Below, piece by piece: positions 12,401 through 53,550 of a DNA stretch of 64,000 bases (position 1 is the first letter of the stretch; every line of letters begins with the position of its first letter). The translations under genes were made by a program, and so were the position numbers. The notes beneath the pieces are model-generated. The model searched no databases. It was not told the DNA's origin and worked only from the letters and a program-made list of their open reading frames with translations. The stretch lies in assembly GCA_051294905.1 (NCBI GenBank), contig CM119383.1, forward strand, positions 7,564,001-7,628,000. Reading direction: 5' to 3'. Source of the stretch: Botryllus schlosseri. Its lineage: Eukaryota.

Positions 12401-15400
12401 CATCGCAATCGTTGCTTCCCAATGTACATTCGTCAATATCTGAAATATTTATGTGGGCAGTCCATAAATCGATTACTACATATGTTCTTAAGAGGAACAG
12501 CTATGGTTCCAAAATGTTTTAAAGGGCATATAGAATTATTTGGGGCTAAGATGTATTGTAGAGTGGGGTTATTCAAAAATAAAAAATCTTCAAATCTTCC
12601 CGGCTATTTGATAACAATGTTTGGTTGGCTAAAAAAAACGCAGCATACCAAACTTTACTCAATTCCAACTACGGTAGTAGATCCAAAACTACAGGACTTC
12701 CTAAAAAAATTTTATTTCAAGACCCATGAGATTGTTGATTTGTCTACAAAAAGGATGCAGAAAAATTTGACGGAATTCCAACCATACTGTGCACTGTACT
12801 ATGTTAGGCTTACCATATTTTGGAAATCTAAAAAGAGGACACTTTTTCAGAAATTTGAGACTTGCAAAACCGGTCCGCTTAGAACTCAAAACACCGTTTT
12901 TTCTCCACATTTCTAGGTGGATGACTAAAAAAAAAAAGGTCATCTTTTCGCTCAGAGCCAAATTCACCATTTTTAACTCCGAAATACCCGCCGGAGTGTC
13001 ACCTCTGTGCTAATTTACGGCATATCAATCGCAGTTTCCTCTAAATCTGACCTAAATTTTTAAAAAAATGGACAAAATCTCAAAAAAGAGGACAAAAGGG
13101 CGTCCTCCGAGGACACTTTCAAAGAAGTCAAAAAAGAGGACATATCCTCTTAAAAGCGGACGTATGGTAACCCTATACTATGTACACTATGTACTGTACA
13201 CTGTACACAGCTATCTTAACTTAGCAGAATTTGACAGCCATAAATCATCCCAGTTGTTATTTTGTGGCTGAAGCATCGATGGTGGTTTGTTGTACTATTT
13301 CCCCCTAAGAAATTAAAAAATAACGCATACCCGTGCAATTTACTTTTCCATCTCCAGTGTATCCCTCGTCGCAGTTACAATCGTGTGATCCAACGTTGTT
13401 TGTGCAATTAGCGTTAGTTACGCAGTCATTAGTTTGTCCCGCAGCGCACTCGTCGATATCTGGAAATGACATTTAGGAGTAGAAGACATTGAATATCACT
13501 TTTTTGACAGGGGTGTGCATTATTTTTGACAATCGGGCCAGATACTAATATTGGTCGGGGCCATGTGCCTACGCATAGGTTTTCTAGTAGCTGCAAGGCG
13601 TATCATTCCATTATCAACATATGCGTTGCAAAGTTGTGATGCTCAGTATGCGGGTCTTGGGAGTAAAGAAGTAATCTCCATCCTAGCAAACGGAAAAACA
13701 CATAATGTATAATAATCTGGGGCATGAGATGATTGGGATATATATTGACGCTAAAGGAATACGCATGTAAAATTAACGAGTGATATAGTACCTGTGCAGG
13801 GGCCATCGACTCCTCCTTCGTATCCCGCTGAACAAGTACAGTTATATGAGCCGATGCGGTTGATACAGTTTCCGGTAACCCCACAAGGGTCGTCATCTGC
13901 CGCACATTCGTCAATATCTGTTAATTGGACAATTGATTAGCATGGAAAGTTGCAAAAAGACAGCTTTTGATCACCCTATATTAGCGTCAATTCTTGACAC
14001 GACATGGTTGAACTTTAAATGCATGCAAACCCACATAAGCACTAACGTAGTAGGAAAGGGAAACCAAATAGGAGTCGAGGTACAACTCAACAACTAGTCC
14101 GCAAGCATACCAACAAGTAAAGTGAGTTTTATCGTACTAACTTCATAGGCAAGAGATACATAAGGAATGAAAATGAAATATGCAAATATTTCAGAAGAGC
14201 TTCTTGGAGGTATAGAAAACTTCAATATACAATGGAATAGTATATTCATGTTGACATGATCCCGAATATTTTCGGCTGACTCTAGTCCGGGGTAATCGTC
14301 AGCAACTAGTAGAGATTTTGGAAAGAACATTATATATCAACAGCCGTATCACAAAATATGACGTTACAAGCATCAAATTTCAAATAAGAGAGCGTTCAAT
14401 GTACTACTACAAAAATAGTAGGCCTACATTGAACGCTCTCTTATTCAAAATATAAGATATACGAGCCAACGAGATCAACATAGCTTCCAGTATCACCACA
14501 TGGATTCGTTGTATGGCATTTGTCAATGTCTGTCAATTGATCAAGAGGTAAACAAAAAGAGTTGCAAACAGACAGCTTTGGTTCAAACTTGATAGAATTG
14601 TTGAAACAGGAGAGAACCACCTTCGTTTGATAATAGGATAATAATTTTGGGGGAGTAGAATTATTCGAACATGATGAGATATCACGAATCCAAGGCGACG
14701 TTGGAATAAGATATGTCACAATGCCCTGGTGAGCGACGAAGGTTCCTTTGACTCTCTCTGTGGGTATGTTGGTGCCTGTGATATTCTTGATCCAGTCAAT
14801 TGCTTCGTAGAGCACAGAATGTGTGAATTATAGACTGTCATTATGTATAAAACATGCGTCTATAATTAAGAGAGACGGTGTGAATAATAAGTCAAAATGC
14901 ATCTAATCATTGTGAGTATATCAGAAAATATGAACAATTGAAAATTGGACTTTTGATATTCGGTGTGAAATAGGCACAAAGACGGTAATATAAAGAGTAA
15001 ACGTTCGTCATGTTACAGCCGTAATACCATACCTACACACAAGTTGCCTGCTCCACCGGTGTACCCTGTCTTGCAAGAGCATAAAAACGAGCCGTCGGTG
15101 TTGCTACAGTTTCCGGTGTCACCACACGGCTCCGCTACGCATTCATCAACATCTGCCAATAGGCGATAAAACAGTAAGTCGACTGGCCACGAATTATTGA
15201 TCGACGTCGTATACAATTCCACATTGTACATAAAAAGTGCTACCGGTACTAATCTGTAACTCTCGTGTACGAGCTTAGACCTACGACGATCATATCAGGA
15301 TATTACTGGCTTCCACCTAAATGGCATTTACAAAGCCAACGTCTCGTTTAAATGCGAGGCAAGTATAAACCGCAACGTCACTATAATCATCTGCACAAAA

Positions 15401-18400
15401 CACACAATGTATAATGCAACACACAGAGCACTGAATAGATATAAGGATGTTGAAACTACACATGCAATCCAACATGGCATTCGGCCTGTCGAGATATAGC
15501 ACTAATGACAAATAGACAAAACAGTATCATTGATATTGCTCATGGCTGATTTTTTCAGTCGAATGTGCTCATCCTTTTCAGGATCTTTCTCTGTGCTTCA
15601 TCTTAATGTGACATTGGAACAGGAGAGGATGGGTCCAGATGAATCTTCTACTCTTATGTAGTGGTATGACAGAGTCCATCGTCGTACAGGCAATGACATT
15701 AACCAATTGATTCGAACCACCAGGTTGACAGCCGCCAAAACGGATCTAAAGTCAGCTTGCAGATCGCAAAGCCATTGGTCTAAACATGGAGGCAACTACA
15801 CTTTTTCGAATATTAGCACAGGAGTATTGTCTTTTGAACGGTTGATGGAAGTGAATGGTGAATTCAGCCCAGACAGGTCTATATGACATGTCTATATCAT
15901 GTGTATTTAACAAATTTCTGATTTTCCGTGTTCTGTGAATTTGACACCGGACTGCTATTATCTGCCAGCAGACAACACATAAAAATATAAACAATAAAAA
16001 TACAAGAAACAGTATCGGTTAGGGATTAATATCAGACCAACACAGTGCCCTCCTACTCTCCATTTGTATCCTTGCCCACAGATGCAGTTGGAAACTTCAT
16101 CAAAGAGCAAACATGCTTAAGTGAATATCGCACCTGTACAGGGGCCACCTACTCCTCCGGTGTATCCCGATTCACAAGTGCAGTTATACGAGCCAACGTC
16201 ATTGGTACAGTTTCCGGTAACATTACAAGGATTTTCCGTTGCCGCACATTCGTCAGTATCTGTAAACGGCACAGGCGATAAACATCAAGTTGACAATAAA
16301 CTAAAGCTTTAAATCCAACTTGTTACTAGTAACATTTGTAACATAACATAACTAGTAACACTAATAACTAACAGTAACTAATAACATCCATTGCTCAAAG
16401 GATTGAGCAGAAGATACTCAAATGCATTGTTGTGACGGTTTATCATGACAGTTTATTGCCTTGATATCTTTATAAATCACCAGTGTAATTGAGGTCAAAC
16501 CCTGGAGAGATCAAATGTGATGTGAGCATGCTCTTGACACAATGGGGTTTGGTCTTAATCCAAAGGTTTTGAGTATAGGCAGAATGGCAATAGCTGGATT
16601 CAAACTTTAATTCCAAACACAAAGTACATACAGCCAAGCAGACCAGGCACAAATATGTAGCCAAGTTATATTGTTCACTGCATGGGATTGAGAAAGTGCT
16701 AAAATGATCTCCCACCTAATGTAGGACACAGTCAAGCAAACCGCTATGCATGATAAAAACTTGAGAATACTTCATAAGTGTAACCATAACCCTGGAGTAG
16801 TGTAGTACCTGTGCAAGGACCGCCGATCCCTCCTTCGTATCCCGTATTACAACTACAGTTATACGAGCCGACGTGGTTGGTACAGCTTCCGGTCTCCTCA
16901 CACGGATCGTCAGGTACATCACATTCGTTAATGTCTGTCAATGCGACAAGTTATAAAAATGAAAACCCATAATAGCAGTACTTCTTTTACAGTTGAGTAA
17001 GGTGGGACTATGAAAGCATGCAAACCACATACACACTTATGCAATGGGCAAGGGAAACCAAATTGGAGTTGAGGTATGACTCAAAACTAGTACCGGTACG
17101 CACAATATCAACAAGCAAATTTTATCCTCTTAACTTCATAAGCAAGAGCTACATACGGAATCGAAAAATAAATAAACATATATTACAGAACGATCACATT
17201 GAACAAAAAAAGCACACATATTCCACAGACTGTTACCCGCGATGAAATTTATGAAAACTTCATCAAAAGAACAAACATGCTTATGTGAAGATCGCACCTG
17301 TACAGGGGTCATCTGATCTTTCCAATGTTAGGATTCAAATATGAATTCGAAGACGACAGTACATACGTCCACACACCCAGTACAGATCTATCGCAAAGTT
17401 ATGATTTTCACTACTGCTGGATCAAGAATGTAGCCTACTAAAATAATCATCCACTAAACACAGGAAGACACGATCCCCAAAACTGGTATGCATGATAAAA
17501 GCTTGAGAATATTTCATCAGAGTAACCATCATCATGTATTGTGGAGTAATATCACACCATTGCAAGGACCATCGATTCCTCCTTCGTATCCCGGTGCGCA
17601 AGTGCAGTTATACGAGCCAATGCGGTTGGTACAGTTTCCGGTATCCCCACAAGGATCGACAGATGCCGCACATTCGTCAATATCTGTCAATTACATGGCG
17701 TGTAGGCATATGAACACTTTAGATATCCAAGATCAGCAAGAATAATTTGTAACTTAGCAAGACTGCGAAAGCAGGATGAAAGTACTCGATGTTGGCGCGT
17801 TTTTATGGTGAGAAAAATTTGCTGAAAACGTTTCAGCATTAGATACGTAATTTCCATTTCGTGCATATCATAAACAGAGATGTAGGCTACATGGCTACTA
17901 CTTTCACTCTCAATGAGTGCTTCGTTTGTTTGTGCGCCTCAAATTTATGTATTTTGATTTTATAAAACTCTCACATTGATTCAAGGATAGGCTACTTTGA
18001 AAGCACTTTTTCACTTTTTCAACTCATTTTCCAGTTTCATTTGATGAGTTTCGGTTTAATACAATGACAGGTACTTACGTTCAAATAAAATTTCACAACA
18101 TACTCATCAACAATGAAAATACACCAATTTTTACACACATCAGATTTCGTAGCTATGCGACCTTGGAATTCACATTTTGGATTTTGATATCTGATGGAAT
18201 AGGATCAATCACAATGTCATGATATAATCAACCTGAAATCAATTAACACCGTTTCCTAATTGGCCATAATTGCAATGGCAATTGAAGTACCACTTGCATA
18301 ATAATATATAGTAGGCATTTATACTGCATTTAGGTAGCCTACTTCATCCACCAAATCGATAAAAGCATTATACAAATGATCATTTTGTAACAATTTCCTA

Positions 18401-27400: not shown

Positions 27401-29777
27401 TCTGGGGGGCGAGCCCCCCAGACCCCCTCCGGCGATACACTGTTTACCACTATTCATCATATTCATTGGGAGTTTCTTTAGTGAATCAGCTTTTGTCGCC
27501 TAACGCGCGAAGCGCGCAAAATTTCTAGAATTCATGATTTCGTCGGTCAGTATGATCGGGAATTGCATACATTGTTATCAATTTTTATCTTCTCTCTGCT
27601 CACGTAATCAGATTTGCCGGTAGAGCTGAGTGAGGTGTGTTTGAAAAGGTAGGACCACTCAATAATAAATAAACATCTTCGGGCGTATACCCGTTGGCAA
27701 GAACGAAACAGCACCTCGTCAGGCCCCCAAAAACGTGGGTCTTGGGCTTACATAGACTGGTAAAACGACCCCCCCATCACGTTGTTCGCGTTTGTCACGA
27801 AATTACCTGTACTCTGTACTGTATTGTGAGCCAGCGCTAAGCGCGAAAATTTTCGATAATTTATGATAAAATCGGTCAATCAGATCGGCGATTGCATATA
27901 TAGTATGCTATCAATTTATTGTCCTTTCTACTCACGTAATTAGATTTACCGGTAGAGCTGAGTGAAGTGTCTTGAAAACGGGAGGGCCCCTAAATAATGA
28001 TCAAACATCTTCGGGCGGGCGGAACCGTTGATATGACTTCGTTACATGATGTTATTTCGTGACTTCCAGTCTGCTATATCAAAAAATATAGAACCGCCCA
28101 AACGTAGGCTTCTAAACTAAGAGACGCACACGATTTCAAATTGGTATTTCTTCACTGGCATAAAATTTTTCCCAGCGGGATGGTATTTGTCTTGTGAGGT
28201 TCAGATTGCAAAGACAGGAACATTCGGCGCCAGTCATTTAGGCGCCTATGGACAATTAGACCTATATGTATTTTGTATATATAGCGAAGTCTTTGGTCTG
28301 CATAAGGGCATAGACCTTTTCGGCCAAGCTTTTCTCGCTGCCAATCGTTCTGGCACACTTCTTGGAGTCGCATGTTATATGGCCTAAAACTTGATTGTAT
28401 GTCTTGGTAGGTCGTGGTCGTGGCGCGGTAATGGCCCAATACCCAATAATAAAGATAAATGGCTAGGTGAACTCGCGCGTAGCGGGAAAAAATTGTCAAA
28501 AAATTGCATAAATTTTCAAAAAATACTCTATGATTTATGCTAATTCACCAAATAATTTTGGGCCCCCCATCGAGCTCGCCCCCCCCCAATTGGGGGGTTT
28601 ATGGTGCGGCAGTTACGGTGCTGATCCTACATGACTAATCTCAGTTGTTCATACAACAATCGAAACGATATGGAAGGAATTTGACGACGACCACCCCTCT
28701 TTCGCTATCTATATTGCATTTAGACAGGCGATATAATATTTCACCGGGTAGTCTGCATACGAAATCAAACTCACAATTATTCTAGTTTTCGCAATAGCAA
28801 TTCAATACATCATCAGCACGTCGGTGGATTAGGCAACGACGTTTACTTTTAGTTTTTGGTTTGGTTTTATGAAGGACCGAAACAGCACCTTGTCAGCACC
28901 CCAGACCACCCTCGTACAACACGCCTTTTAAGCAACACTCCTGACCGATGTGATCAATACATCGAAGGTTTCAGCCAACATTCGGTGGTCATTTTCAGCG
29001 ATTGTCTTCTCGATGCCGATCTTTTTGGCAGCGAAGTCGCATGTTGGCCGAAACTGTATAAGTTTTGGTTGTCGTGGCGCGGTAATGACCGTTGCATAAA
29101 TGCTTAATTCTATGGATAAAGATAGACATCTACATTGAATCGCGCGAAGAAAATTAAATTTGATTGACAAAATCTCCCAAAATCTGCATAATTTATGTTG
29201 ATACACAGGAATATTCTACTAACCCCCAATTTGAGGTTTGGGGTGCGGCAGTTACGGCCCTGGTTTTATGGTTAAGTGGTTCCGTCAACGCGATAACAGG
29301 CCTAACAAAGAATGGAAACAATTAAGCGCTGTTGGGCTGATTGGCTACCTCACAACTTATTCTAGGGTCCCAACTGTACCGGTGTGAATCCGCTGAATTA
29401 TTTCACTATACTTCATGGGACGCCTAAATATAATTAGAATCCTCGTAACAGAAAATGGATGTGGTCGGATGGATAAAGGAAAAGCAAAACTGTGCTTCTT
29501 TTATAGGCCCACCTCAGGTAAACAAGTACAACTTTAGACCTATAGTCGAAATTTTATTCCACTTTCGAGCATATTTATCCAAATATCATATATATCCACA
29601 TCCACATATTCGAGTCTTAGAAACGGATCTCCACTCTTATGGGAGGCTCCGTCACATCGAGCTATGATATAGGCTACCCAGTTACAGGCGACCAAGAAAA
29701 CATTACTTACCGACATTTGCGTATTGACACGTTGCGAGGCTAATCGCGAAAGATATGCCGACAACAAGCCGAAGCAT
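186..29777 (-). CDS. Gene A (whole model, 3' end beyond window): secreted or cell-surface protein SP-CUB-EGFx14-CUB-EGFx2-FN3x2-unassigned, about 1310 aa in window
   Basis: Phase-consistent GT-AG exon chain read by hand: 29711-29777, 22097-22258, 20196-20298, 19414-19604, 18433-18564, 17558-17683, 16809-16934, 16134-16259, 15033-15152, 13792-13917, 13331-13459, 12311-12439, 12129-12251, 11319-11447, 9288-9416, 9106-9228, 8327-8449, 7763-7894, (7604-7645 tentative), 6920-7060, 6533-6633, 5464-5671, 4857-4976, 3777-3905, 3541-3713, 2598-2736, 2351-2535, 1257-1395, 186-454. No in-frame stops. Confidence 0.8.
1257..1395 (-). CDS. Gene A exon, FN3-2 second half
   Basis: [37 protein letters not shown]; acceptor ttcattctcag, donor G|GTGAAA, phase 0-1. 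Confidence 0.85.
2351..2535 (-). CDS. Gene A exon, FN3-2 first half
   Basis: [40 protein letters not shown], the classic P..L......W..P.....Y FN3 pattern; phase 1-0. Confidence 0.85.
2598..2736 (-). CDS. Gene A exon, FN3-1 second half
   Basis: [16 protein letters not shown] (GL..T.Y motif); donor C|GTGAGT; NAGNAG acceptor (2736 or 2733). Confidence 0.85.
3541..3713 (-). CDS. Gene A exon, FN3-1 first half (divergent)
   Basis: [41 protein letters not shown]; donor GGC|GTGAGT; phase 1-0. Confidence 0.75.
3777..3905 (-). CDS. Gene A exon, EGF-Ca 16
   Basis: [43 protein letters not shown]; six Cys; phase 1-1. Confidence 0.92.
4227..4790. mobile_element. Foldback element with about 150-bp inverted arms
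   Basis: About 4275-4444 is the imperfect reverse complement of about 4621-4785; related arms at about 3165-3280, 14195-14455 and 47500-47745. Confidence 0.8.
4857..4976 (-). CDS. Gene A exon, EGF 15
   Basis: [40 protein letters not shown]; phase 1-1; donor GTATGT. Confidence 0.9.
5464..5671 (-). CDS. Gene A exon, CUB2 C-terminal part
   Basis: Ends ...[22 protein letters not shown] (CUB F.SD...GF motif); acceptor tatttttag, donor G|GTAAGC. Absent from the ORF track. Confidence 0.85.
6533..6633 (-). CDS. Gene A exon, CUB2 middle part
   Basis: [21 protein letters not shown] (CUB I.L.F..F.TE...D.L motif); acceptor gtttcctctccag, donor GTAAGT. Confidence 0.85.
6920..7060 (-). CDS. Gene A exon, CUB2 N-terminal part
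   Basis: [30 protein letters not shown]...; phase 1-1; donor G|GTACGA. Confidence 0.75.
7763..7894 (-). CDS. Gene A exon, EGF-Ca 14
   Basis: [44 protein letters not shown]; phase 1-1. Confidence 0.9.
8327..8449 (-). CDS. Gene A exon, EGF-Ca 13
   Basis: [41 protein letters not shown]. Confidence 0.92.
9106..9228 (-). CDS. Gene A exon, EGF-Ca 12
   Basis: [41 protein letters not shown]. Confidence 0.92.
9288..9416 (-). CDS. Gene A exon, EGF-Ca 11
   Basis: [43 protein letters not shown]. Confidence 0.92.
9813..11073. mobile_element. hAT-type MITE, family CAGAGGTGGTCA (1261 bp)
   Basis: 12-bp TIR; perfect 8-bp TSD CATATCAG; CTACTT/AAGTAG subterminal arrays; homologous to 58876-60142. Confidence 0.9.
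11319..11447 (-). CDS. Gene A exon, EGF-Ca 10
   Basis: [43 protein letters not shown]. Confidence 0.92.
12129..12251 (-). CDS. Gene A exon, EGF-Ca 9
   Basis: [41 protein letters not shown]. Confidence 0.92.
12311..12439 (-). CDS. Gene A exon, EGF-Ca 8
   Basis: [43 protein letters not shown]. Confidence 0.92.
12805..13175. mobile_element. hAT-type MITE, TIR TAGG(C/G)TTACCATA (371 bp)
   Basis: 13-bp TIR with one mismatch; perfect TSD TACTATGT; AAAAAGAGGAC subterminal repeats. Confidence 0.85.
13331..13459 (-). CDS. Gene A exon, EGF-Ca 7
   Basis: [43 protein letters not shown]. Confidence 0.92.
13792..13917 (-). CDS. Gene A exon, EGF-Ca 6
   Basis: [42 protein letters not shown]. Confidence 0.92.
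14195..14455. mobile_element. Foldback element, right arm truncated, abutting the dead EGF exon
   Basis: GAAGAGCTTCTTGGAGG start as at 4227; hairpin centre near 14410. Confidence 0.75.
14441..14529 (-). pseudogene. Dead EGF exon (5' half only, truncated at a foldback element)
   Basis: Intact acceptor caattgacag, then [24 protein letters not shown] (E to K, third Cys to Y), running into repeat sequence and TAA; no 3' half or donor. Confidence 0.75.
15033..15152 (-). CDS. Gene A exon, EGF-Ca 5
   Basis: [40 protein letters not shown]. Confidence 0.92.
16134..16259 (-). CDS. Gene A exon, EGF-Ca 4
   Basis: [42 protein letters not shown]. Confidence 0.92.
16809..16934 (-). CDS. Gene A exon, EGF-Ca 3
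   Basis: [42 protein letters not shown]. Confidence 0.92.
17255..17311 (-). pseudogene. Remnant of an EGF exon 3' end plus donor and intron
   Basis: aaacttcatcaaaagaacaaacatgcttatgtgaagatcgcacctgtacagggg closely matches 16093-16144; only about 14 exon nt remain. Confidence 0.7.
17558..17683 (-). CDS. Gene A exon, EGF-Ca 2
   Basis: [42 protein letters not shown]. Confidence 0.92.
18433..18564 (-). CDS. Gene A exon, EGF 1
   Basis: [44 protein letters not shown]; donor G|GTGAGA. Confidence 0.9.
19414..19604 (-). CDS. Gene A exon, CUB1 C-terminal part
   Basis: ...[26 protein letters not shown] (CUB RGF..Y motif); phase 2-1; donor GTCTCT is weak. Confidence 0.75.
20196..20298 (-). CDS. Gene A exon, CUB1 middle part
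   Basis: [22 protein letters not shown]...; acceptor tactgtttcag; donor AG|GTAGGG gives phase 2, matching the next exon. Confidence 0.75.
20785..21314. mobile_element. hAT-type MITE with GACTCGAGTC arrays, TIR (C/T)AGGGTTGC
   Basis: TSD GTGAGAGA/GTGGGAGA (7 of 8); many GACTCGAGTC and CAAGT motifs. Confidence 0.85.
22097..22258 (-). CDS. Gene A exon, CUB1 N-terminal part
   Basis: [34 protein letters not shown] (CUB C...SG...SP.Y...YP); donor G|GTGAGA. Confidence 0.8.
22689..23105. mobile_element. Degenerate copy of the GACTCGAGTC MITE family
   Basis: AGGGTTGTAA...TTACAACCCTG ends, internal similarity to 20785-21314; no clear TSD. Further remnants at about 2062-2115, 24124-24230, 24460-24520 and 25070-25205. 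Confidence 0.65.
24352..24430 (+). repeat. Telomere-like G-rich tract (TTAGGG variants), G-quadruplex-forming potential
   Basis: GGTTAGGGGGATATTAGGGTTGGGGGAGGGAGATATTAGGGTTGTGGGAAAGGGGGATGTTAGGGTTAGGGTGAGGG. Confidence 0.75.
25300..25600 (-). mobile_element. Possible degenerate non-LTR (LINE) RT fragment
   Basis: Minus-strand [15 protein letters not shown] resembles the RT C-terminal YLGV motif; surrounding frames are broken. Confidence 0.25.
26114..27276. mobile_element. hAT-type MITE with GACTCGAGTC arrays, TIR CAGTGTTGGGAT (1163 bp)
   Basis: 12-bp TIR; TSD TAGTATAC/TATTATAC (7 of 8). Confidence 0.85.
27313..28623 (+). mobile_element. hAT-type MITE, family CAGGGCCGTAAC (1311 bp)
   Basis: Perfect TSD ATCCTACA; poly-C tracts; homologous to 28872, 34780 and 44712 copies. 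Confidence 0.9.
28872..29262 (+). mobile_element. hAT-type MITE, family CAGGGCCGTAAC, short derivative (391 bp)
   Basis: Perfect TSD GTTTTATG. Confidence 0.85.
29711..29777 (-). CDS. Gene A first coding exon, signal peptide
   Basis: ATG...[22 protein letters not shown] then G|GTAAGT phase-1 donor; splices in frame to the CUB1 exon; too short for the ORF track. Confidence 0.7.
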
Positions 29778-34779: not shown

Positions 34780-35589
34780 CATGGGCGTAACAGCACTTCG
34801 TCAGCCCCCCCCCTAAAAAAAAAACGTTGGTCTTGGGCCCCCCATATGGTGATAAACCGAACTTCTCTGCTCACGTAATCAGATTTACCGGTAGAGCTGA
34901 GTGAGGTGTTTTTGAAACTCTAGAGTCCGTAACTAATAATTGAACATCTTCGGGCGGGCGGACCCGTTGGTATGACTTCGTTACATGATGTTATTTCGTG
35001 ACCTCCTGTCTGCTATATAAAAAATATAGAATCGCCCAAATGTACTAAACTGAAGGATCACACGATTTCAGATTGGTATTTCTTCACTGGCATGTAATGT
35101 TTTCCTGCGGGGTGGTATTTGTCTTGTGAGGTTCGGATTGCCAAGACAGGAACATTCGGCGCCAGTTATTTAGGCGCCTATATAGACAAAGTAACCGATA
35201 TGTATATTGTATATATAACGAAGTTTTCGGTCAGCATAAGGGCAGTCATTTACGGCAAAGGTTTTCTCGCTGCCGATCGTTATGGCACACTTCTTGGAGT
35301 CGCATGGCCTAAAATTTTATATGTGTTGTTGCGTCGTAGCGCGGTAATGGCCAACGCCGATATGTCCATTTCTATAAATCTTGCATATTTTTTCTTGAGA
35401 TAAGAGTTCCCAATAATCAAGATATTTGGCGACTTGAAATCGCGCCGAGCGCGAAAATTCTTTGAAAAAGTTGCATAAATTTTCTCAAAATACTCTATAA
35501 TTTATGCCAATTCACGAAATAATTTTGGGCCCTCTTCGAGCTCGCCCCCCCCCACTAGGGGGATTTGGGGTGCGGCAGTTACGGCCCTG
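34780..35589 (+). mobile_element. hAT-type MITE, family CAGGGCCGTAAC (810 bp)
   Basis: Perfect TSD CGTGGATT. Confidence 0.9.
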
Positions 35590-44711: not shown

Positions 44712-45964
44712 CAGGACCGTAACTGCCGCACCCCAAACCCCCCAATTGGGGGGGGGGTCCGAGCTCGAAGGGGGCCCAAAATTATTTTGTGAATTAGCAT
44801 AAATTATGGAGTATTTTTTGAAAATTTATGGAACTTTCCAAAAATTTTTAGCGCTACGCGCGATTTAAAGGTGTCAAATATCATGATTATTTGGTACTCT
44901 TCCCCCAAGAAAAGAGCACGCAAGATTTTTAGAAATGGACATATCGGCGTTGGCCAATACCGCGACACGACGTACCAAGACATATAACGATTTAGGACAT
45001 ATTACATGCGACTCCAAGAAGTGTGCCAGAACGACCGGCAGCGTAAAAACCTTGTCCGAAAAGGATTGCCCTTAGGTTGACCTTCTGAACCTCAGAAGAC
45101 GAATTCCATCCCGCAGGGAAAAATTACACGCCAGTGAAGAAAAACCAATTTGAAATCGCGTGCGTCTTTTAGTTTAGTACGTTAGCCCGATTCTATATTT
45201 TTTGATATAGCAGACAGGAGGTCACGAAATAACATCATGTAACGAAGTCCTACCAACGGGTCCGCCCGCCAAAGATGTTTAATTATTATTTACGGGCCCC
45301 ACAGTTTCCAAGAAACCTCCCTCAGCTCTACCGGTAAATCTGATAAAGTGAGCAGAGAGGACAAGATATTGATAGCAATATATATGCAATTCCCGATCTT
45401 ATTGATTGATTTTGTCATTAATTATCGGAATTTTTTGCGCTTCGCGCTGGATCGCTAAACAGTACGGCTAATTTCGTGGCAAAAGCGATCAACACGATGG
45501 GGGGGGGGGGGGGTCGGTTTATCATCCTATGGGAGCCCAAGACCCAAGTGTTTTGGGGACCTGATGAAGTGTTGTTTCGTTCCTGCCAACGGGTATACGC
45601 CCGAAGATTTTAATTATTATTGAGGAGTCCTACCTTTTCAAATACATCTCACTCAGCTCTACCGGTAAATCTGATTACGTCAGTAGATAGGGGATAAAAA
45701 TTGATAGCAATATATATGCAATCCCAGATGATACTGACCGATTCAATCATGAATTCGTGAAATTTTTCGCGCTTCGCGCGACTAGGCGAGAATGGGAGGC
45801 CCACTAAACGGACACCCAATATTGATGACAAGTAGCGGCGAAAAGCGGGTAGACAAGGGGGTCTGGTGGGCTATGCCCCCCAGAAGTCCGGTTTATCGCC
45901 CTATGGGGGGCCCAAGACCAACGTTTTTTTGGGGGGGGCCTGACAAAGTGCTGTTACGGCCCTG
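44712..45964 (-). mobile_element. hAT-type MITE, family CAGGGCCGTAAC, inverted (1253 bp)
   Basis: Perfect TSD GTCCAAAG; reverse-complement homologue of 27313-28623. Confidence 0.9.
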
Positions 45965-47745: not shown

Positions 47746-48869
47746 AGTAAAAATAGAAGTATGAAAGGGCAAGCTGTGTGAATATACAACCATTCAAGCA
47801 AGCAGTGCAACTAGTACTAGACAAAGCCTACCCAAGTACTTCGAAGAATTGCAAGTAGCAAACTTGATCGTTAGTTACTGCATGACCACCTCCGCGGAGA
47901 TGGCAGCAGCACGAGTAGCGTGTCATGATTGCTTTGTAAAATCACAAAATATACCAAATTGCTATATAGTAAAATGGTGCTATGAAAAATACGACCTTAA
48001 AATTGATTGATTGGATAAGTAACACTCACCCAGACAGATCCATTTCGCGTAATTCCTCTCTCGCAGACGCAGCATATCCGATGGTAACGAGAGTAGTCCA
48101 TGCTGGCGGCGTTAAAGTGCAAGAAGATGGGTGCCACTTTAAATCTCACATAGCGACACTTTCCGTTGACCGGCCGACTTTGAACTACATAGTGATGTTC
48201 CCAATTTCATAGTGAAGTCATTTTCAATATTGATATATCCCTCGTCGAAGGTGGTCGCGCAATTTGTTTTATGGACCGACGACCAGTATGATCATTACCA
48301 GCGGCGATGACGAAGTTTTGCCTTTCTGGCCTTCTCTACGCACACTTCTTTTTGACTAATCATCATTCATCAACGCGTTGATAATCAAGCGTCGCAATAG
48401 TAAATAAAGCGCAAAAGCTTGACAAACACCCTTTCTCAACGTATTCCCTGCCGTTTCATTTTCACAGTGTAACCTGCCTACTCTCGGCCATCAATTTTGC
48501 CATGACGAATTCCCCAGTAGGATGAGTTGCCTTCAAACCTATAACAATATATATGGTATATATGTGCCCCGGTCTGTCATCCACCAGCAAGATATCAGAA
48601 GCACGACACAAACAGATGACTTCGGTGAAAAATTATATTGATAAAATGCGTTAGCGAATAACATATCTCAAGCTTGAAGAGATGTATATTAATAAAATTC
48701 AAGGGGCAAGTGCAATGTAGTAGAAATTAATCGGGCATAGGAAACAGGTTGTAATTTTAATCTACATCGAACATGTGCGTTCACAAATGAGAATCATAAC
48801 AAAATTCGATGCCTTGGTACTTAGGCTTAATAGCAGTCTTGCAATACATATCATTATAGATATACGTAT

Positions 48870-49027
48870 TGTGGTGATCGCTATCGTCTCATTTCGGTTT
48901 TGTTATTATTGCTTAATTGGTTGATTATCTACTGTAGTTCTGGGTATAAAACCATTGCGTTTCCATTCATTGTTTGTCTTAGTTAATAAAAGCCTTGGAT
49001 GTAAAGAGGTGTATTTGATTCACAACA
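48870..49027 (+). repeat. 5' LTR (158 bp)
   Basis: TGTGGTGATCG...GATTCACAACA; TATAAAA at 48945-48951; AATAAA at 48985-48990. Confidence 0.97.
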
Positions 49028-49028
49028 A

Positions 49029-49044
49029 TTTTATTAACTAAGAC
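49029..49044 (+). promoter_or_regulatory. Self-complementary primer-binding site (pairs with LTR 48976-48991)
   Basis: TTTTATTAACTAAGAC is the exact reverse complement of GTCTTAGTTAATAAAA; no TGG-starting tRNA PBS is present. Confidence 0.85.
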
Positions 49045-49054
49045 CTACTGAGTC

Positions 49055-51649
49055 ATGTCTGTCGATGGAGGAGCAGAAAACGGTCGACGCCCTATTCTCA
49101 TACGGGTGCCAACTCTTGAGGTATTACCAAATGCTCCGGCGGTTCTGAAGATATTCTGTCATTGGGAACGACAACTGCAATCCTACATAGCTGCCGCATC
49201 CCTTTCTGATGCCACAATAGATAAGCTTGCATTATTGTGTGGATTCATTTCGGCGGACGTCTACGCATTGATAGAAGAAAAGCAATCCTACGACGAAGCT
49301 CTGAAGTTACTACAGGATCTTTACAAACCGAAGAAAAATGTTATATTTTCAAGACATCTTCTCTCTAGTAGAGCGCAAGATACCAACGAGACCGTTCAGG
49401 AATTTCACCAAAGCTTATCAGCGCTCGCAAAGGATTGTGATTTCAAGAGTGTCACCGCCGAGCAATATCGCCAAGAATCTATAAGAGATGCTTTCATCAG
49501 AGGTTTGAAATCTTCCCATATACGTACGAGACTGCTTGAATGCGAGGAACTGCCACTGCAAAAAGCGATTATCACTGCTATTTCACTGGAGAAAGCTCAA
49601 GAATTTTCCACTTCCTATAAAGTTAATGACGTCGATGCACGTTTCGTTGCAAGCACCTATAACGATCCCAGCCAGCCTGCAAGAGACGCACCGGATCCTC
49701 AGCTTAACACGGTTTCTGCAATTAGTAGCAGAGTACCCGAAGTTAAATCAATCAAAGAATGCACGTTCTGTGGAGGTACCCATGCCGCTAAGCGCGACCA
49801 ATGCCCAGCATCGATGGTTGAATGTTATAAATGTGGCAGACTTGGACATTTCAGGAAATTCTGTAAATCAAAAAGCAAATACCTGGCTGCTGCTCCGAAA
49901 TGTTTGAAAGACTCGACCATACCCCTTACAAATGCACAGCAAATATTCGATGCCATGCTCGATTCGGGAGCTGCTGAATGTTTCATCCAACTGGATATTG
50001 CTATCAAGCTAGGTTTGTTTCCACAGGGACCAACTTACAGTATCAAATTGGCTTCCAACAAATGCGCCACCGATGTGCTAGGACATGTTACCGTCGGATT
50101 CATAGTGGCGTCACGTGAGTACACTCATCAATTTGGCATAATCGATGATTTATGTGCAGACTTTGTCCTCGGACTAGATTTCATGAGATTGCACAAGAAG
50201 GTTATTTTCGAATTCAAAGATGGCAAGAACGAGCCATTTACAGTAGGCGTAAACTCTCACTTGGCACTTGTTACTTCCAAAGTCGATGAACCGCTTCGTA
50301 TATTCCAATTCTTGACTCCAGATTACAAACCCATTGCCGCTCCTTCTCGAAGGTATAGCAAAGAAGATAACGAATTTATTAAAGGCGAAGTACAGAAGCT
50401 TCTCAGTGACGGTATCATAGAACCGAGTCATTCACCTTGGCGTGCTCAGCCACTAGTAACCAGGGACGTGCGGCATAAACGAAGACTTGTCATTGACTAT
50501 TCGGTATCTATCAACAAGTACACCAATTTGGATGCTTATCCACTGCCACGTATAGAAGATGTCATCAATGAAGTCTCTAAAGGCAAGTACTATTCAGCCG
50601 TTGATTTGAAATCGGCTTACCATCAAGTCCCGTTACACCCTGATGACAGACCTTTCACGGCGTTCGCCGCTTGCGGTTCACTTTACCAATTTTGCCGATT
50701 ACCGTTCGGCGTCACGAATGGAGTAGCGGCTTATCAACGTTATATCGATTCGTTTATTTCAAAGCATCAATTACAGGGTGTCGTAGCGTATTTGGATGAT
50801 ATTACAATATATGGCGCTACCAAGGAAGAGCATGATATCCGCTTGAAAGCATTTTTAGATTCCGCAACAGCTTGTCACCTCACCATCAATACAGAGAAAT
50901 CAAGTTTTGGAATCGAAGAAATACAGTTGCTTGGACACAAAATATCTCATGGCAACATAAGTCCGGACCCTGACCACATGAAGCCGCTCCTGGATATGAC
51001 CGCGCCAACGGACTCCAAAGGTTTGAAACGTATATGCGGTATGTTTTCATATTATTCCAAATGGATTCACAATTTCTCGGCTAAGATTAGGCCTCTTATT
51101 CGTTCATCCAATTTTCCTTTGGGAGCTGATGCTATTGCTGCTTTTCGTCAATTAAAGAAAGAGATAGTGGACTCTTGTCTAGGATGCATTTACGAAGACC
51201 AACCATTTACAGTTGAGTGTGACGCGTCAAACTGCGCCATTGCAGCAGTTTTGAACCAGTGTGATCGGCCTGTAGCCTTCTTCTCTCGCACACTTACAAA
51301 GACAGAATCGAACTACCCCGCTATTGAGAAAGAAGCTCTCGCAATCATTGAATCGGTTCGGAAGTGGAATTACTTGCTTGCCAATCAGAAATTCCTTCTT
51401 GTTACAGATCAAAGAGCTTTATCTTACATATTTCAGAAGAAGCATCACAGCAAAATCAAGAATACAAAACTTGCGCTATGGCGTCTTGAACTCAGCTCTT
51501 TCAATTATGACATCTCACATCGTGCGGGAATCGAAAACGTCGCTGCAGACACCTTGTCTCGTATTTGCTCCGTAACCGGTTCAGGTCAAAATTTAAATGA
51601 AATCCATGCACAACTTGGCCATTGTTCGCCGATTGTCCCACTTTGTTAA
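49055..51649 (+). CDS. pol: Gag-protease-RT-RNase H polyprotein (864 aa, terminates early in the integrase zinc finger)
   Basis: Zn knuckles CTFCGGTH...C and CYKCGRLGHFRKFC; protease LDSGA; RT LPFG and YLDD; RNase H CDAS, IEKEALAI, TDQRAL, NVAADTLSR. Confidence 0.95.
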   Translation: MSVDGGAENGRRPILIRVPTLEVLPNAPAVLKIFCHWERQLQSYIAAASLSDATIDKLALLCGFISADVYALIEEKQSYDEALKLLQDLYKPKKNVIFSRHLLSSRAQDTNETVQEFHQSLSALAKDCDFKSVTAEQYRQESIRDAFIRGLKSSHIRTRLLECEELPLQKAIITAISLEKAQEFSTSYKVNDVDARFVASTYNDPSQPARDAPDPQLNTVSAISSRVPEVKSIKECTFCGGTHAAKRDQCPASMVECYKCGRLGHFRKFCKSKSKYLAAAPKCLKDSTIPLTNAQQIFDAMLDSGAAECFIQLDIAIKLGLFPQGPTYSIKLASNKCATDVLGHVTVGFIVASREYTHQFGIIDDLCADFVLGLDFMRLHKKVIFEFKDGKNEPFTVGVNSHLALVTSKVDEPLRIFQFLTPDYKPIAAPSRRYSKEDNEFIKGEVQKLLSDGIIEPSHSPWRAQPLVTRDVRHKRRLVIDYSVSINKYTNLDAYPLPRIEDVINEVSKGKYYSAVDLKSAYHQVPLHPDDRPFTAFAACGSLYQFCRLPFGVTNGVAAYQRYIDSFISKHQLQGVVAYLDDITIYGATKEEHDIRLKAFLDSATACHLTINTEKSSFGIEEIQLLGHKISHGNISPDPDHMKPLLDMTAPTDSKGLKRICGMFSYYSKWIHNFSAKIRPLIRSSNFPLGADAIAAFRQLKKEIVDSCLGCIYEDQPFTVECDASNCAIAAVLNQCDRPVAFFSRTLTKTESNYPAIEKEALAIIESVRKWNYLLANQKFLLVTDQRALSYIFQKKHHSKIKNTKLALWRLELSSFNYDISHRAGIENVAADTLSRICSVTGSGQNLNEIHAQLGHCSPIVPLC

Positions 51650-52690
51650 ATCCAAGAATTTACCGTATTCCACGGAAGATGTGAAACGTATTTGTTCCAG
51701 CTGCCGTGTTTGCGCTGAACTCAAACCTAGATTTTATAAAGGAGATTCTCACCAACTGATCAAAGCCATTTATCCCTGGCAAAGAATATCAATCGATTTC
51801 AAAGGTCCGGTTCCCGGTAAACGTAAATTCATTTTAATAATTGTCGACGAATATTCACGATTCCCTTTTGCATTTCCATGCTACAATATGACGTCCGAAA
51901 CCGTCATCGAATGTCTAATGACGTTGTTCACTCTCGTTGGATTGCCTGAATATGTACATAGCGATAGATCGATGTCATTTATGTCGAAAAGAATGAACGA
52001 TTTCCTAACGAAGAAAGGTGTTGCAACAAGTCAATCAACCCCTTATCATCCCACTGGCAATTCCCAATGTGAGAGAACCAACCAAACTGTTTGGAGAACA
52101 GTAAAACTCCTGCTTGCCCAATACCAAATGCCACTGTCTTCATGGGAGGAGGTTACTCCCAGACGCATTGCACTGTATCAGGTCGCTTCTATGCACGGCT
52201 ACAAATTGTACACCTCACGATCGATTTTTCTCTTTTCAAAGGAGATCAATGAATGGCTCTTCATTACCCGATTGGCTTTTCAAGTCGGGCACAGTTCTAC
52301 TGCGCAAGTTCGTCCGCGACAAGAGTGACCCTTTATGCGATAAAGTGTATTTGCTCGATGCTAATCCAAAGTACGCTTTGATTCGCTATCCAGATGGAAG
52401 AGAGTCGACCGTCTCCACTACAGACCTTGCTCCTTATCCGCGTATTACCGAGGTCACCGAATCCTTGCCACGCGTAAAGAAATCTCTTCCTTCTCAATCG
52501 GACCTGGATATGCCCTCCAGCGAAATCGAAGAAGAAAAGGTTACTCAGGCCGACGAATTCCGTAGTGAAGACGCTACCATCCCTGTAATCGCTGACAAAT
52601 CTCAAAGCAGCTCCGACTCTCAAGACTCCGAGACGCTCTTCACGGTCAAGAAGAGCCCCTGATAGATATGGGGATTTCGTTTCCCATTAG
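51597..52690 (+). pseudogene. Integrase region, frameshifted in three places
   Basis: H...GH in the ORF1 frame; CSSC, IDFKGP, VDEYSRF, HSD, QCER in the next frame; LPDALHCIRSLLCTATNCTPH in the next; terminal RRSSRSRRAPDRYGDFVSH* (stop 52688-52690) back in the ORF1 frame. Confidence 0.85.
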
Positions 52691-52749
52691 ATATTTTGTT
52701 TGAATTGGTTATTTTCTGCGCTAATGTTCGTTTTATTAGTCGGGGAGAT

Positions 52750-52907
52750 TGTGGTGATCGCTATCGTCTCATTTCGGTTTTGTTATTATTGCTTAATTGG
52801 TTGATTATCTACTGTAGTTCTGGGTATAAAACCATTGCGTTTCCATTCATTGTTTGTCTTAGTTAATAAAAGCCTTGGATGTAAAGAGGTGTATTTGATT
52901 CACAACA
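52750..52907 (+). repeat. 3' LTR (158 bp)
   Basis: Identical to the 5' LTR; preceded by the polypurine tract. Confidence 0.97.
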
Positions 52908-53550
52908 CGTATACGTTACAGAATTTTGATATAGGCTATATAGATGTATACAGAACTTATTTACAATGTATTACATTTTCGTTAGACCCATTAAAAACGA
53001 GAATATCACCCATTAAAAACGAGAATATCACGAGTTATTATGTTTATCAAATTTAACAAAAGCGGATCACCTCTTTGGCTTGATGGATGCATACAATTAC
53101 ATACATAAATTTACTACTTTAAAAAGTGATTGTCACAAGAAGCCAGAAGAGGTTTCAAAATGGTTTCTAACTACTAGCATGGAAAAGTAGAAAATGCATA
53201 ATGCATATGCTATTCGATATATAGGTGAAGAAATCAAAGTCAAGATTGAAGGTCATAATGACACCATTACCAGACATTTTCAAAACAACAAAGGCAGTAT
53301 ACACGCAACGCTAGCGATTTAACAACGGATATTTCGTATAGTAACACGGATAACATAAGTGTGAAGAAAATCAAGCGGCAACATTAAACACAGAACTACC
53401 GGGCAATGCATAGGCCATAAAAGACAGGCAGCACCAAGTGGAAAATAGGCAGCGATAATATGAAATTTGGCAGAATACAGCGATAAAAATGATAAAAGGT
53501 TTTGCGACAATAGTCTGTTGAAAGTTGTCCGATTATTTTGCTTACTTTAC

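What the first reader, a model, noticed from the sequence alone, without database searches (positions are those of the whole stretch)
48945..49044. Self-priming (tRNA-independent) signature in a Gypsy element with Mag-like Gag
Seen in sequence: there is no TGG-type tRNA PBS after the 5' LTR. One nt after the LTR, TTTTATTAACTAAGAC (49029-49044) is the perfect 16-nt reverse complement of GTCTTAGTTAATAAAA in the LTR (48976-48991). That LTR segment starts 31 nt after the first T of TATAAAA (48945), where a Pol II start is expected, and it contains the AATAAA signal. Established: Schizosaccharomyces pombe Tf1 and the Tf1/sushi group prime minus-strand synthesis by folding the mRNA 5' end onto the PBS and cutting it with RNase H. 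Inference: this element does the same, but its two-knuckle Gag (CxxCxxxH...CPA...CxxC...GH...C) looks Mag-like rather than Tf1/sushi chromovirus, and I see no chromodomain. That would mean self-priming in a separate lineage. I cannot check whether repeat databases already list such self-primed families.
Basis: partly seen in the sequence, partly recalled or inferred. Interest (0 to 1): 0.88.

Follow-up and report, generated by a model that had tools for sequence, protein, structure and literature searches.

The report
Self-primed compact Gypsy retrotransposon clade
A young 4-kb Gypsy-type retrotransposon has, where a tRNA normally binds, a sequence that pairs perfectly with its own LTR; about 19 related families in several animal phyla keep this pairing through compensating changes, so the clade very probably starts DNA copying with a piece of its own RNA.

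Summary
One nt after the 5' LTR (48870-49027), 49029-49044 is the perfect 16-nt reverse complement of 48976-48991 in the LTR. That segment starts 31 nt after TATAAAA. None of 200,000 shuffles reaches 16.

The new result is comparative. The same layout occurs in about 12 families of this genome and 7 foreign ones (Styela, Papilio, Macrosteles, Armadillidium, three unnamed assemblies):
- an LTR arm of 12-18 nt
- RCC opening a hairpin
- an LTR end in CA
- a single A spacer
- a PBS that perfectly complements the arm

The arm sequences differ between families. In the 11 families tabulated, 132 of 132 pairs are Watson-Crick against 8.3 of 12 for mismatched families. gag starts 0-45 nt after the PBS, so there is no room for a tRNA site.

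I read this as Tf1-like self-priming (confidence 0.8). The transcription start, the RNase H cut and the cDNA are not shown; the RNA runs were nearly silent.

The "Mag-like" label is unverified. Published Mag-lineage elements in Culex use tRNA-Leu or tRNA-Ser. The clade lacks a chromodomain, and its RT-RNase H is 28% identical to Tf2 and 29-32% to other Gypsy lineages. It is probably outside Tf1/sushi, but no reference phylogeny could be run.

Self-priming outside Tf1/sushi is already predicted in plants (Tcn1, copia TAR). I class this as a new variant of a known kind.

This copy is a polymorphic recent insertion with a frameshifted integrase.

The parts
48865..48869 (+). Target-site duplication CGTAT, 5' copy
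   Evidence: Identical 5-mer at 52908-52912. The empty-site joint 48863->52907 skips 4043 nt in RNA reads of 3 runs.
48870..49027 (+). 5' LTR, 158 bp, TGTGG...CAACA
   Evidence: 100% identical to 52750-52907. The boundaries are set by TG/CA and the target-site duplication.
48945..48951 (+). TATAAAA box, 31 nt upstream of the LTR arm
   Evidence: Read. Conserved within this family but not in related families.
48976..48991 (+). LTR arm, the proposed self-primer (start of R); contains AATAAA at 48985-48990 and an Inr-like TTAGTT at 48979-48984
   Evidence: Perfect complement of 49029-49044. Conserved in 16 copies. Covaries with the PBS across families.
48992..49010 (+). Hairpin beginning with GCC directly after the LTR arm (U5-IR-like)
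   Evidence: Predicted in nearly every family (about 16 of 18 loop-only folds). The RCC...GGY base is nearly constant and the inner pairs vary between families. The stem is weak in this copy (-3.9 kcal/mol).
49028..49028 (+). Single-nucleotide spacer A between LTR and PBS
   Evidence: A in 11 of 11 tabulated families and in 7 further families of this genome. The only exception is L081, which has GT.
49029..49044 (+). Primer-binding site complementary to the element's own LTR
   Evidence: No TGG. All 48 exact genomic occurrences of the 16-mer or its complement that could be placed lie in this family's LTR/PBS pattern; two were not placed.
49055..51649 (+). Gag (two zinc knuckles), protease, RT and RNase H in one open frame of 864 aa
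   Evidence: ORF. Pfam: Retrotrans_gag, zf-CCHC, Asp_protease, RVT_1, RT_RNaseH.
51597..52662 (+). Integrase and C-terminal region, split over two further frames by frameshifts near 51623 and 52153
   Evidence: rve domain. Frames from tblastn with P0003. Indels relative to a sibling copy with an uninterrupted frame.
52742..52749 (+). Polypurine tract GGGGAGA(T) abutting the 3' LTR
   Evidence: Similar GGGGAGA-type tracts in related families.
52750..52907 (+). 3' LTR
52908..52912 (+). Target-site duplication CGTAT, 3' copy

Best explanation
The element is a member of a large, currently active clade of compact Ty3/Gypsy retrotransposons: about 4 kb, one gag-pol frame of about 1200 aa, LTRs of 135-390 bp, no chromodomain. 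I propose that the clade primes minus-strand DNA synthesis with its own RNA rather than with a tRNA. The proposed steps are these. Transcription starts in the 5' LTR at or near 48976. The first 12-18 nt of R fold back over a 30-70-nt loop, which carries a hairpin that opens with RCC. They pair with the PBS, which begins one nt after the LTR. The element's RNase H cuts at the 3' end of the duplexed LTR arm, after ...AAUAAAA. The new 3'-OH is extended across the spacer A and U5 back to the cut, giving a strong-stop cDNA of about 37 nt. That cDNA transfers to the short remainder of R at the 3' end of the RNA. If, as reported for Tf1, the primer stays attached and is copied during plus-strand synthesis, the PBS of each new copy is rewritten from the LTR arm. 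That would explain why the two arms are perfectly complementary in every family although their sequence drifts. Shown: the anatomy, the perfect complementarity, its covariation, the absence of any other possible PBS, and recent mobility. Inferred: the transcription start, the cut, the primer extension and the strand transfer.
For: (1) Position and perfection in this copy.
(2) The same architecture is present in 7 foreign families whose RT-RNase H is 52-63% identical to this one. These are L031 and L032 (unnamed ENA assemblies), L033 Papilio machaon, L034 Macrosteles, L035 Armadillidium, L036 (metagenome scaffold) and L067 Styela clava.
(3) It is also present in about 11 further families of this genome, with Gag 35-48% identical. 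The LTR ends of three of them were confirmed from their 3' LTRs.
(4) Covariation: over the first 12 pair positions, 132 of 132 cells in 11 families are Watson-Crick. In the 10-family table, 8 of 12 positions show changes on both sides. Arms paired with another family's PBS average 8.3 of 12, and 0 of 200,000 permutations reach the observed total.
(5) gag's ATG lies 0-45 nt after the PBS, in some families directly adjoining it, so no other primer site fits.
(6) Several families in one genome have different PBSs, each matched by its own LTR. This excludes a shared host primer. The 16-mer occurs in the 495-Mb genome only in this family's copies, apart from two unplaced hits.
(7) A hairpin directly after the arm is predicted in almost all families, as is required at the equivalent place in Tf1 (Tf1 requirement as cited in PMC5443660, reference 105).
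(8) In two families (L079, L080) AATAAA lies in the loop and not in the arm, yet the arm/PBS pairing is kept. The pairing is therefore not simply a poly(A)-signal mask.
(9) The mechanism works now: LTRs are 100% identical in four families of this genome, many gag-pol frames are uninterrupted, and this insertion is absent from an allele seen in RNA reads.
(10) The predicted start at 48976 lies 31 nt after the TATA box.
Against: There is no experimental or read-level evidence for the transcription start, the cleavage or the cDNA. The four RNA runs laid on the element gave almost no reads over it. Other families lack a TATA box about 30 nt before their arm. Many arms contain an Inr-like T(C/T/A)AGT that would place the start 1-5 nt inside the arm. 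After the cut, the R sequence left for the first strand transfer would be short, roughly 10-25 nt, and the poly(A) site is unmapped. Covariation shows that the pairing is maintained; it does not show what the pairing is used for. The window copy itself has a frameshifted integrase, so it cannot be autonomous as assembled.
Confidence: 0.8

Rival explanations
1. The primer is the same LTR arm, but supplied by the 3' LTR copy of the same RNA (5'-3' cyclisation) or by a second, co-packaged RNA, rather than by fold-back of the 5' end.
For: The arm is identical in both LTRs, so sequence alone cannot tell which copy pairs. If transcription started inside or after the arm, as the Inr-like motifs might allow, only the 3' copy would be present in the RNA.
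Against: The short, constant-range loop (30-70 nt) and the hairpin stacked on the duplex point to a local fold. The TATA spacing in this family fits a start at the arm's first base. A primer made from the 3' copy would be about 4 kb long. In Tf1 the 5' end is the part used (PMC4600332, PMC5341516).
Confidence: 0.1
2. The duplex has another role, such as masking the promoter-proximal poly(A) signal, packaging or dimerisation, and reverse transcription is primed by something not yet recognised.
For: In most families the arm covers the AAUAAA, AUUAAA or AGUAAA hexamer. This resembles the poly(A) hairpins that silence the 5' signal in some retroviruses (my knowledge of the literature, not tested here).
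Against: The paired segment sits exactly at the PBS position, one nt after the LTR, in every family. No room is left for another PBS before gag. In L079 and L080 AATAAA lies outside the arm yet the pairing persists. A dual role is compatible with the best explanation.
Confidence: 0.07
3. A host tRNA, tRNA fragment or other small RNA is the primer, and the match to the LTR is incidental.
For: Three families of this genome share the PBS core TTTTATTAACT.
Against: There is no TGG. The PBSs differ widely between families, including within this one genome, and each has a perfect partner in its own LTR. All placed genomic hits of the 16-mer lie in element copies. There is no tRNA gene in the window.
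Confidence: 0.01
4. Chance inverted repeat in AT-rich sequence.
For: The arms are AT-rich.
Against: 0 of 200,000 shuffles reach 16 nt. The feature recurs in about 19 independent families at the same position.
Confidence: 0

Closest known systems
Tf1/Tf2 (S. pombe), Tj1 (S. japonicus) and the Tf1/sushi group of self-primed Ty3/Gypsy elements
   Same: There is no tRNA PBS. The PBS next to the 5' LTR is complementary to a short LTR segment at the start of R (11 nt in Tf1, from my memory of the Tf1 literature, not checked here; 12-18 nt here). A stem-loop lies between primer and PBS. The element encodes its own RT-RNase H that could make the cut (PMC4600332, PMC5341516).
   Different: No chromodomain. 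RT-RNase H is only 28% identical to Tf2, no closer than to errantivirus, mdg1 or Ty3 lineages. The hosts are invertebrate animals. The element is much smaller, with tiny LTRs. The primer usually contains the poly(A) hexamer. The spacer is an invariant single A. Nothing has been demonstrated biochemically.
Predicted self-priming lineages in plants: the Tcn1 chromovirus clade and the Ty1/copia TAR lineage (Houba, Osr-1)
   Same: Self-priming is inferred from LTR/PBS complementarity without experiments. These lineages show that the mechanism is not confined to Tf1/sushi (PMC6317226).
   Different: Different superfamily or clade and different host kingdom. No link to the poly(A) signal was mentioned in the passages I read.
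Mag lineage of metazoan Ty3/Gypsy (Mag, SURL, Jule, mosquito Mag-like families)
   Same: Non-chromoviral, metazoan and often single-ORF. Mag A LTRs are described as having a clear AATAAA, no conserved TATA and a YAYAACA 3' end, which fits several families here (PMC3601003).
   Different: Mag-like elements of Culex have PBSs complementary to tRNA-Leu or tRNA-Ser (PMC3286476); this clade has none. Phylogenetic membership was not testable here.
Cigr-1 clade (Ciona intestinalis; later reported in molluscs and annelids)
   Same: Compact, tunicate-associated Gypsy element (4.2 kb from my memory of Simmen and Bird 2000). A Ciona protein is 55% identical in RT-RNase H, and a Styela element has the full architecture. 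The clade is reported outside tunicates (PMC6238403, PMC8556966).
   Different: I could not obtain the Cigr-1 sequence or its original description, so identity with this clade and what is known of its PBS remain unknown.

Membership tests
Ty3/Gypsy (Metaviridae) LTR retrotransposons | LTRs with TG..CA ends, a target-site duplication, a polypurine tract, and domain order Gag-PR-RT-RNase H-IN | tested here: met
Self-primed LTR retrotransposons (mechanistic class defined by Tf1) | No PBS complementary to a tRNA 3' end | tested here: met
   No TGG after the LTR. The PBS differs between families of one genome. The 16-mer is found only in element copies.
Self-primed LTR retrotransposons (mechanistic class defined by Tf1) | The sequence directly downstream of the 5' LTR is complementary to a segment of the LTR downstream of the promoter | tested here: met
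   16 of 16 nt here. 12-18 nt in about 19 families, with covariation.
Self-primed LTR retrotransposons (mechanistic class defined by Tf1) | The complementary segment is the very 5' end of the mRNA | tested here: inconclusive
   The TATA box 31 nt upstream fits in this family, but the other families lack it. The RNA reads were too few to map a start.
Self-primed LTR retrotransposons (mechanistic class defined by Tf1) | A structured RNA (U5-IR-like stem-loop) between primer and PBS | tested here: met
   A hairpin opening with RCC directly after the arm is predicted in about 16 of 18 loop-only folds. Its inner pairs vary between families. This is a prediction only.
Self-primed LTR retrotransposons (mechanistic class defined by Tf1) | RNase H cleavage of the RNA duplex releases the primer, and the strong-stop cDNA carries it | not testable with these tools
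   Needs biochemistry or cDNA sequencing.
Tf1/sushi phylogenetic group (chromoviruses) | Chromodomain at the integrase C-terminus | tested here: not met
   No PF00385 at E <= 0.1 in five intact relatives or in the window's pieces, and none in the precomputed Pfam lists of 120 homologues.
Tf1/sushi phylogenetic group (chromoviruses) | RT, RNase H and IN cluster with Tf1, Tf2 and sushi in a phylogeny | tested here: inconclusive
   Identities from a structural alignment only: Tf2 28%; 412, 297, 17.6, opus, gypsy and Ty3 29-32%. No tree with reference sequences was possible.
Mag lineage | RT/IN phylogeny with Mag, SURL and Jule | not testable with these tools
   No reference sequences could be fetched.
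Mag lineage | tRNA-Leu or tRNA-Ser PBS, as reported for Mag-like elements of Culex | tested here: not met
   PMC3286476 compared.
Mag lineage | LTR with a clear AATAAA, no conserved TATA and a YAYAACA 3' end (Mag A model) | tested here: inconclusive
   The AATAAA is conserved. The 3' end is CACAACA, CATAACA or TACAACA in several families but GTCA, GACA or TTCA in others (PMC3601003).
Cigr-1 clade | Phylogenetic grouping with Ciona Cigr-1; compact 4.2-kb single-ORF element | tested here: inconclusive
   The size and the tunicate relatives fit.

The most novel reading that the evidence does not exclude
A pan-metazoan, non-chromoviral clade of miniature Ty3/Gypsy elements (tunicates, insects, crustaceans, this host and probably more) replicates without any tRNA. 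It uses the first 12-18 nt of its own transcript as primer. That primer usually doubles as the poly(A) signal. Self-priming arose here independently of Tf1/sushi, and this has not been described before.
Probability: 0.4. Interest if true: 0.8.

Novelty: new variant of a known kind. Interest (0 to 1): 0.72.

Why it matters
Self-priming has been proven only for fission-yeast Tf1. Elsewhere it is inferred, mostly for its chromoviral relatives and a few plant lineages. A second, unrelated and very widespread animal clade with the same solution would have several consequences.

- It would show that tRNA-independent priming is a recurrent strategy, and in these genomes a common one.
- Such elements would escape host defences that target tRNA-primed elements through 3' tRNA fragments (reviewed in PMC7472051).
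- Annotation tools that look for tRNA-type PBSs will mis-score or miss these elements.
- The clade offers a minimal, natural system: a 4-kb element with 135-390-bp LTRs. It could be used to study how one short RNA segment serves as transcript start, poly(A) signal and primer.
- The perfect arm/PBS match in every family is also a testable signature that the PBS is rewritten from the primer in each replication cycle.

Tried and rejected
- **RNA reads (the only read-laying run):** four RNA runs gave almost no reads on the element, so there is no transcription start or poly(A) site. They did reveal the empty-site allele.
- **Covariation within the family:** 16 copies at 82-100% identity conserve both arms and show only isolated single mismatches. 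This is uninformative, so I moved to other families.
- **L036 contig start:** the contig begins exactly at the LTR arm. Its 55-nt terminal repeat equals a likely assembler k-mer overlap, so I rejected it as evidence for the start.
- **Loci that gave nothing:** P0002's contig had no DNA available. L068 (Trichinella) is a fragment without gag or LTR. L085 is a palindrome-rich region without the architecture. L083 and L073 are degenerate copies of the L082 family and family D.
- **Genome fetch:** Smaller requests worked.
- **Clade naming:** a structure search against Swiss-Prot gave near-equal identities to all Gypsy lineages. The protein atlas gave only generic RT clusters. No reference sequences for Mag, SURL, Cigr-1, sushi or Tf1 could be obtained, so I built no tree.
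- **Literature:** the original papers on Tf1 self-priming, Mag, Jule, the Anopheles Gypsy families and Cigr-1 are not held. Full-text searches found no report of self-priming in Mag, Cigr-1 or any other non-chromoviral animal Gypsy element. This is not proof of absence.
- **Rejected explanations:** host tRNA primer, chance and poly(A) masking as the only role.

Full report
**1.
The window carries a 4038-bp LTR element at 48870-52907. Its LTRs are 158 bp, 100% identical, and have TG..CA ends. A 5-bp target-site duplication CGTAT flanks it (48865-48869 and 52908-52912). A polypurine tract GGGGAGA(T) abuts the 3' LTR.

TATAAAA lies at 48945-48951. The 16-mer GTCTTAGTTAATAAAA lies at 48976-48991 and begins 31 nt after the first T of the TATA box. 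It contains AATAAA at 48985-48990. After the LTR's terminal CA (49027) comes one A (49028), then TTTTATTAACTAAGAC (49029-49044), the exact reverse complement of the 16-mer. gag's ATG is at 49055. No TGG follows the LTR.

None of 200,000 shuffles of the LTR or of the post-LTR 22-mer reaches 16 nt; the maximum is 14. Apart from the PBS itself, only one other 10-mer of the internal region has a complement in the LTR. The 85-nt leader folds with the full 16-bp stem at -21.6 kcal/mol, z = -3.05.

**2. What the element is.**
One frame (49055-51649, 864 aa) encodes Gag with two zinc knuckles, an aspartic protease, RT and RNase H. The integrase follows in two further frames (51597-52328 and 52114-52662). 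Compared with a sibling copy whose frame is uninterrupted, this copy has indels that are not multiples of three near 51623 and 52153, and another near 52614. As assembled, its integrase is therefore broken.

The 495-Mb genome holds about 16 full 5' ends of this family at 82-100% identity, several with uninterrupted frames of 1214-1215 aa. RNA reads from three runs join 48863 directly to 52907, skipping 4043 nt, which is the element plus one copy of the duplication. An allele without the insertion therefore exists. The site lies in a transcribed host region. With identical LTRs, this is a very recent, polymorphic insertion.

**3. The comparative result.**
Within the family both arms are simply conserved, so I looked further out. 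A protein search found more than 1600 homologues. Many are single gag-pol proteins of about 1200 aa on contigs of about 4 kb, 50-63% identical in RT-RNase H. The named ones come from Ciona, Styela, Lepidoptera, Hemiptera, an isopod, a copepod and Trichinella/Trichuris.

I fetched seven foreign loci: L031 and L032 from unnamed assemblies, L033 Papilio machaon, L034 Macrosteles, L035 Armadillidium, L036 a metagenome scaffold, and L067 Styela clava. I defined their LTRs from both copies. A Gag search of this genome gave many more families at 34-48% identity, many with uninterrupted frames of 1200-1280 aa. I examined their 5' regions and confirmed three LTR ends from the 3' LTRs. Those three families all have 100% identical LTRs, with target-site duplications TACCC, CTGC(+) and CGTAG.

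Every family has the same layout:
- an LTR arm of 12-18 nt
- then RCC
- a loop of 30-70 nt
- the LTR's terminal CA
- one A
- a PBS that is the perfect complement of the arm

Arm sequences differ from family to family. Examples are GTCTTAGTTAATAAAA, ATTTAAGTTAGTAAAA, TAACTAGATTAAA, TCAATGAAATAAA, TTTGAGCTAATAAAA and TTCTATGTTGCTTAAA.

Anchored at the loop-side end, the first 12 positions are Watson-Crick in 132 of 132 cells across 11 families. In the 10-family table, eight of the twelve positions carry changes on both sides. An arm paired with another family's PBS averages 8.3 of 12, and none of 200,000 permutations reaches the observed total.

The most distant family examined (L081, 35% Gag identity) still has a 13-nt complement, but with a 2-nt spacer.

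**4. A second conserved feature.**
Directly after the arm, the loop is predicted to form a hairpin in about 16 of 18 loop-only folds. Its base is RCC paired with GGY, and the inner pairs differ between families: ACCAA/TTGGT, ACCTT/AAGGT, ACCG/CGGT, GCCTAA/TTAGGT. This hairpin would stack on the primer/PBS duplex at the proposed cut site. It recalls the U5-IR-like stem-loop that Tf1 needs (Lin and Levin 1998, as cited in PMC5443660).

**5. Mechanism.**
The paired segment sits exactly where every LTR retroelement has its PBS. gag starts 0-45 nt later, in some families directly adjoining the PBS. No other primer site is therefore possible.

A host primer is excluded. Families in one genome have different PBSs, each mirrored in its own LTR. 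The 48 exact genomic hits of the 16-mer or its complement fall into this family's LTR/PBS pattern, except two hits I could not place.

The best reading is Tf1-type self-priming (PMC4600332, PMC5341516). The 5' end of the transcript folds onto the PBS. RNase H cuts after the arm. The 3'-OH is extended through the spacer and U5 back to the cut. The short cDNA then transfers to the rest of R at the 3' end.

If the primer stays attached and is copied in plus-strand synthesis, as reported for Tf1 (title of reference 61 in PMC6317226), the PBS is rewritten from the arm in each cycle. This would explain perfect complementarity despite sequence drift. It would also predict that the outer edge of the complementarity marks the transcription start. 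In this family that edge (48976) is 31 nt after the TATA box. All of these steps are inferences.

In most families the arm contains the poly(A) hexamer (AATAAA, ATTAAA or AGTAAA). The duplex could therefore also mask the promoter-proximal signal. In L079 and L080, however, AATAAA lies in the loop and the pairing is still kept, so masking cannot be the only role.

**6. What is not shown.**
- The four RNA runs gave almost no reads on the element, so the start and the poly(A) site are unmapped.
- Other families lack a TATA box at about -30.
- Many arms carry an Inr-like T(C/T/A)AGT that could put the start a few nt inside the arm.
- Sequence alone cannot tell whether the 5' copy, the 3' copy or a second RNA provides the arm.

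**7. Comparison with what is known.**
Self-priming is proven for Tf1. It is inferred for Tf2, Tj1, fungal relatives and vertebrate sushi elements (PMC4600332, PMC6934838). It is predicted for the Tcn1 clade and the Ty1/copia TAR lineage in plants (PMC6317226). The mechanism, and its occurrence outside Tf1/sushi, are therefore not new.

This clade has no chromodomain in five intact relatives at E <= 0.1. A structure-based comparison of its RT-RNase H (model pLDDT 84) gives 28% identity to Tf2 and 29-32% to 412, 297, 17.6, opus, gypsy and Ty3. It is thus not a close relative of Tf1/Tf2, but I could not run a phylogeny with reference sequences.

Mag A LTRs share a clear AATAAA, the lack of a conserved TATA and a YAYAACA end (PMC3601003). 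Against that, Mag-like elements of Culex are reported with tRNA-Leu or tRNA-Ser PBSs (PMC3286476). The compact Ciona Cigr-1 clade, later found in molluscs and annelids (PMC6238403, PMC8556966), is an equally good candidate.

Full-text searches found no report of self-priming in Mag, Cigr-1 or any other non-chromoviral animal Gypsy element. The older subscription literature was not readable.

**8. Verdict.**
- The self-priming interpretation is strongly supported by covariation, at confidence 0.8.
- The clade label is open.
- The finding is a new variant of a known kind. It is interesting because it concerns a large, active, multi-phylum animal clade and has distinctive features: a primer that overlaps the poly(A) signal, an invariant one-A spacer and an adjacent hairpin.
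- Mapping the RNA ends and the strong-stop cDNA would settle it.

Noticed in passing
window 48700-48869 and 52908-53100: The element sits in a transcribed host region (depth about 86 in a single-cell RNA run at 48700-48846). 24 reads from three runs join 48863 to 52907, so an allele without the insertion exists. Most host reads are only 95-99% identical to the window, which suggests a very polymorphic species.
   Followed up: partly
window 27583-28565 and 34854-35532: Several direct repeats of 100-160 nt at 77-92% identity, spaced about 6.94 kb apart, plus a local 332-bp repeat. This could be an older LTR element or a segmental duplication.
   Followed up: no
window 45278-45779: Two adjacent units of about 331 bp at 80% identity (45278-45447 and 45609-45779).
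   Followed up: no
window 11313-17714: Two further direct-repeat families: 171 nt in four copies at 13778-17714, and 180 nt in two copies at 11313 and 13325, all at 73-83% identity.
   Followed up: no
L067 (Styela clava) 732-9002: 171-bp LTRs recur at 732, 3277, 6228 and 8832. This is a tandem array of elements that share LTRs, interleaved with a long internally repetitive block.
   Followed up: no
G000 C10:3651760-3660340: Four Gag matches of one related family lie within 9 kb in two repeating pairs, which looks like a local tandem duplication of elements. One 5' end (L083) has a point change in its PBS and a rearranged upstream region.
   Followed up: partly
L085 (G000 C18:117650-118240): The region upstream of a related gag is filled with repeats of the palindrome TGACTCGAGTCA. 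No LTR-arm/PBS architecture was found in the stretch fetched.
   Followed up: no
L015/L017/L038 (G000 C13:17389348-17394265): A near-identical sibling copy (98.6-100%) lies on the same chromosome about 9.8 Mb away. Its 5' LTR matches only from LTR position 87 onward, with unrelated sequence upstream.
   Followed up: no
L079 and L080 (own genome, C8 and C2): In these two more distant families the arm has no canonical poly(A) hexamer, and an AATAAA lies in the loop instead. The link between primer and poly(A) signal is therefore common but not obligatory.
   Followed up: partly
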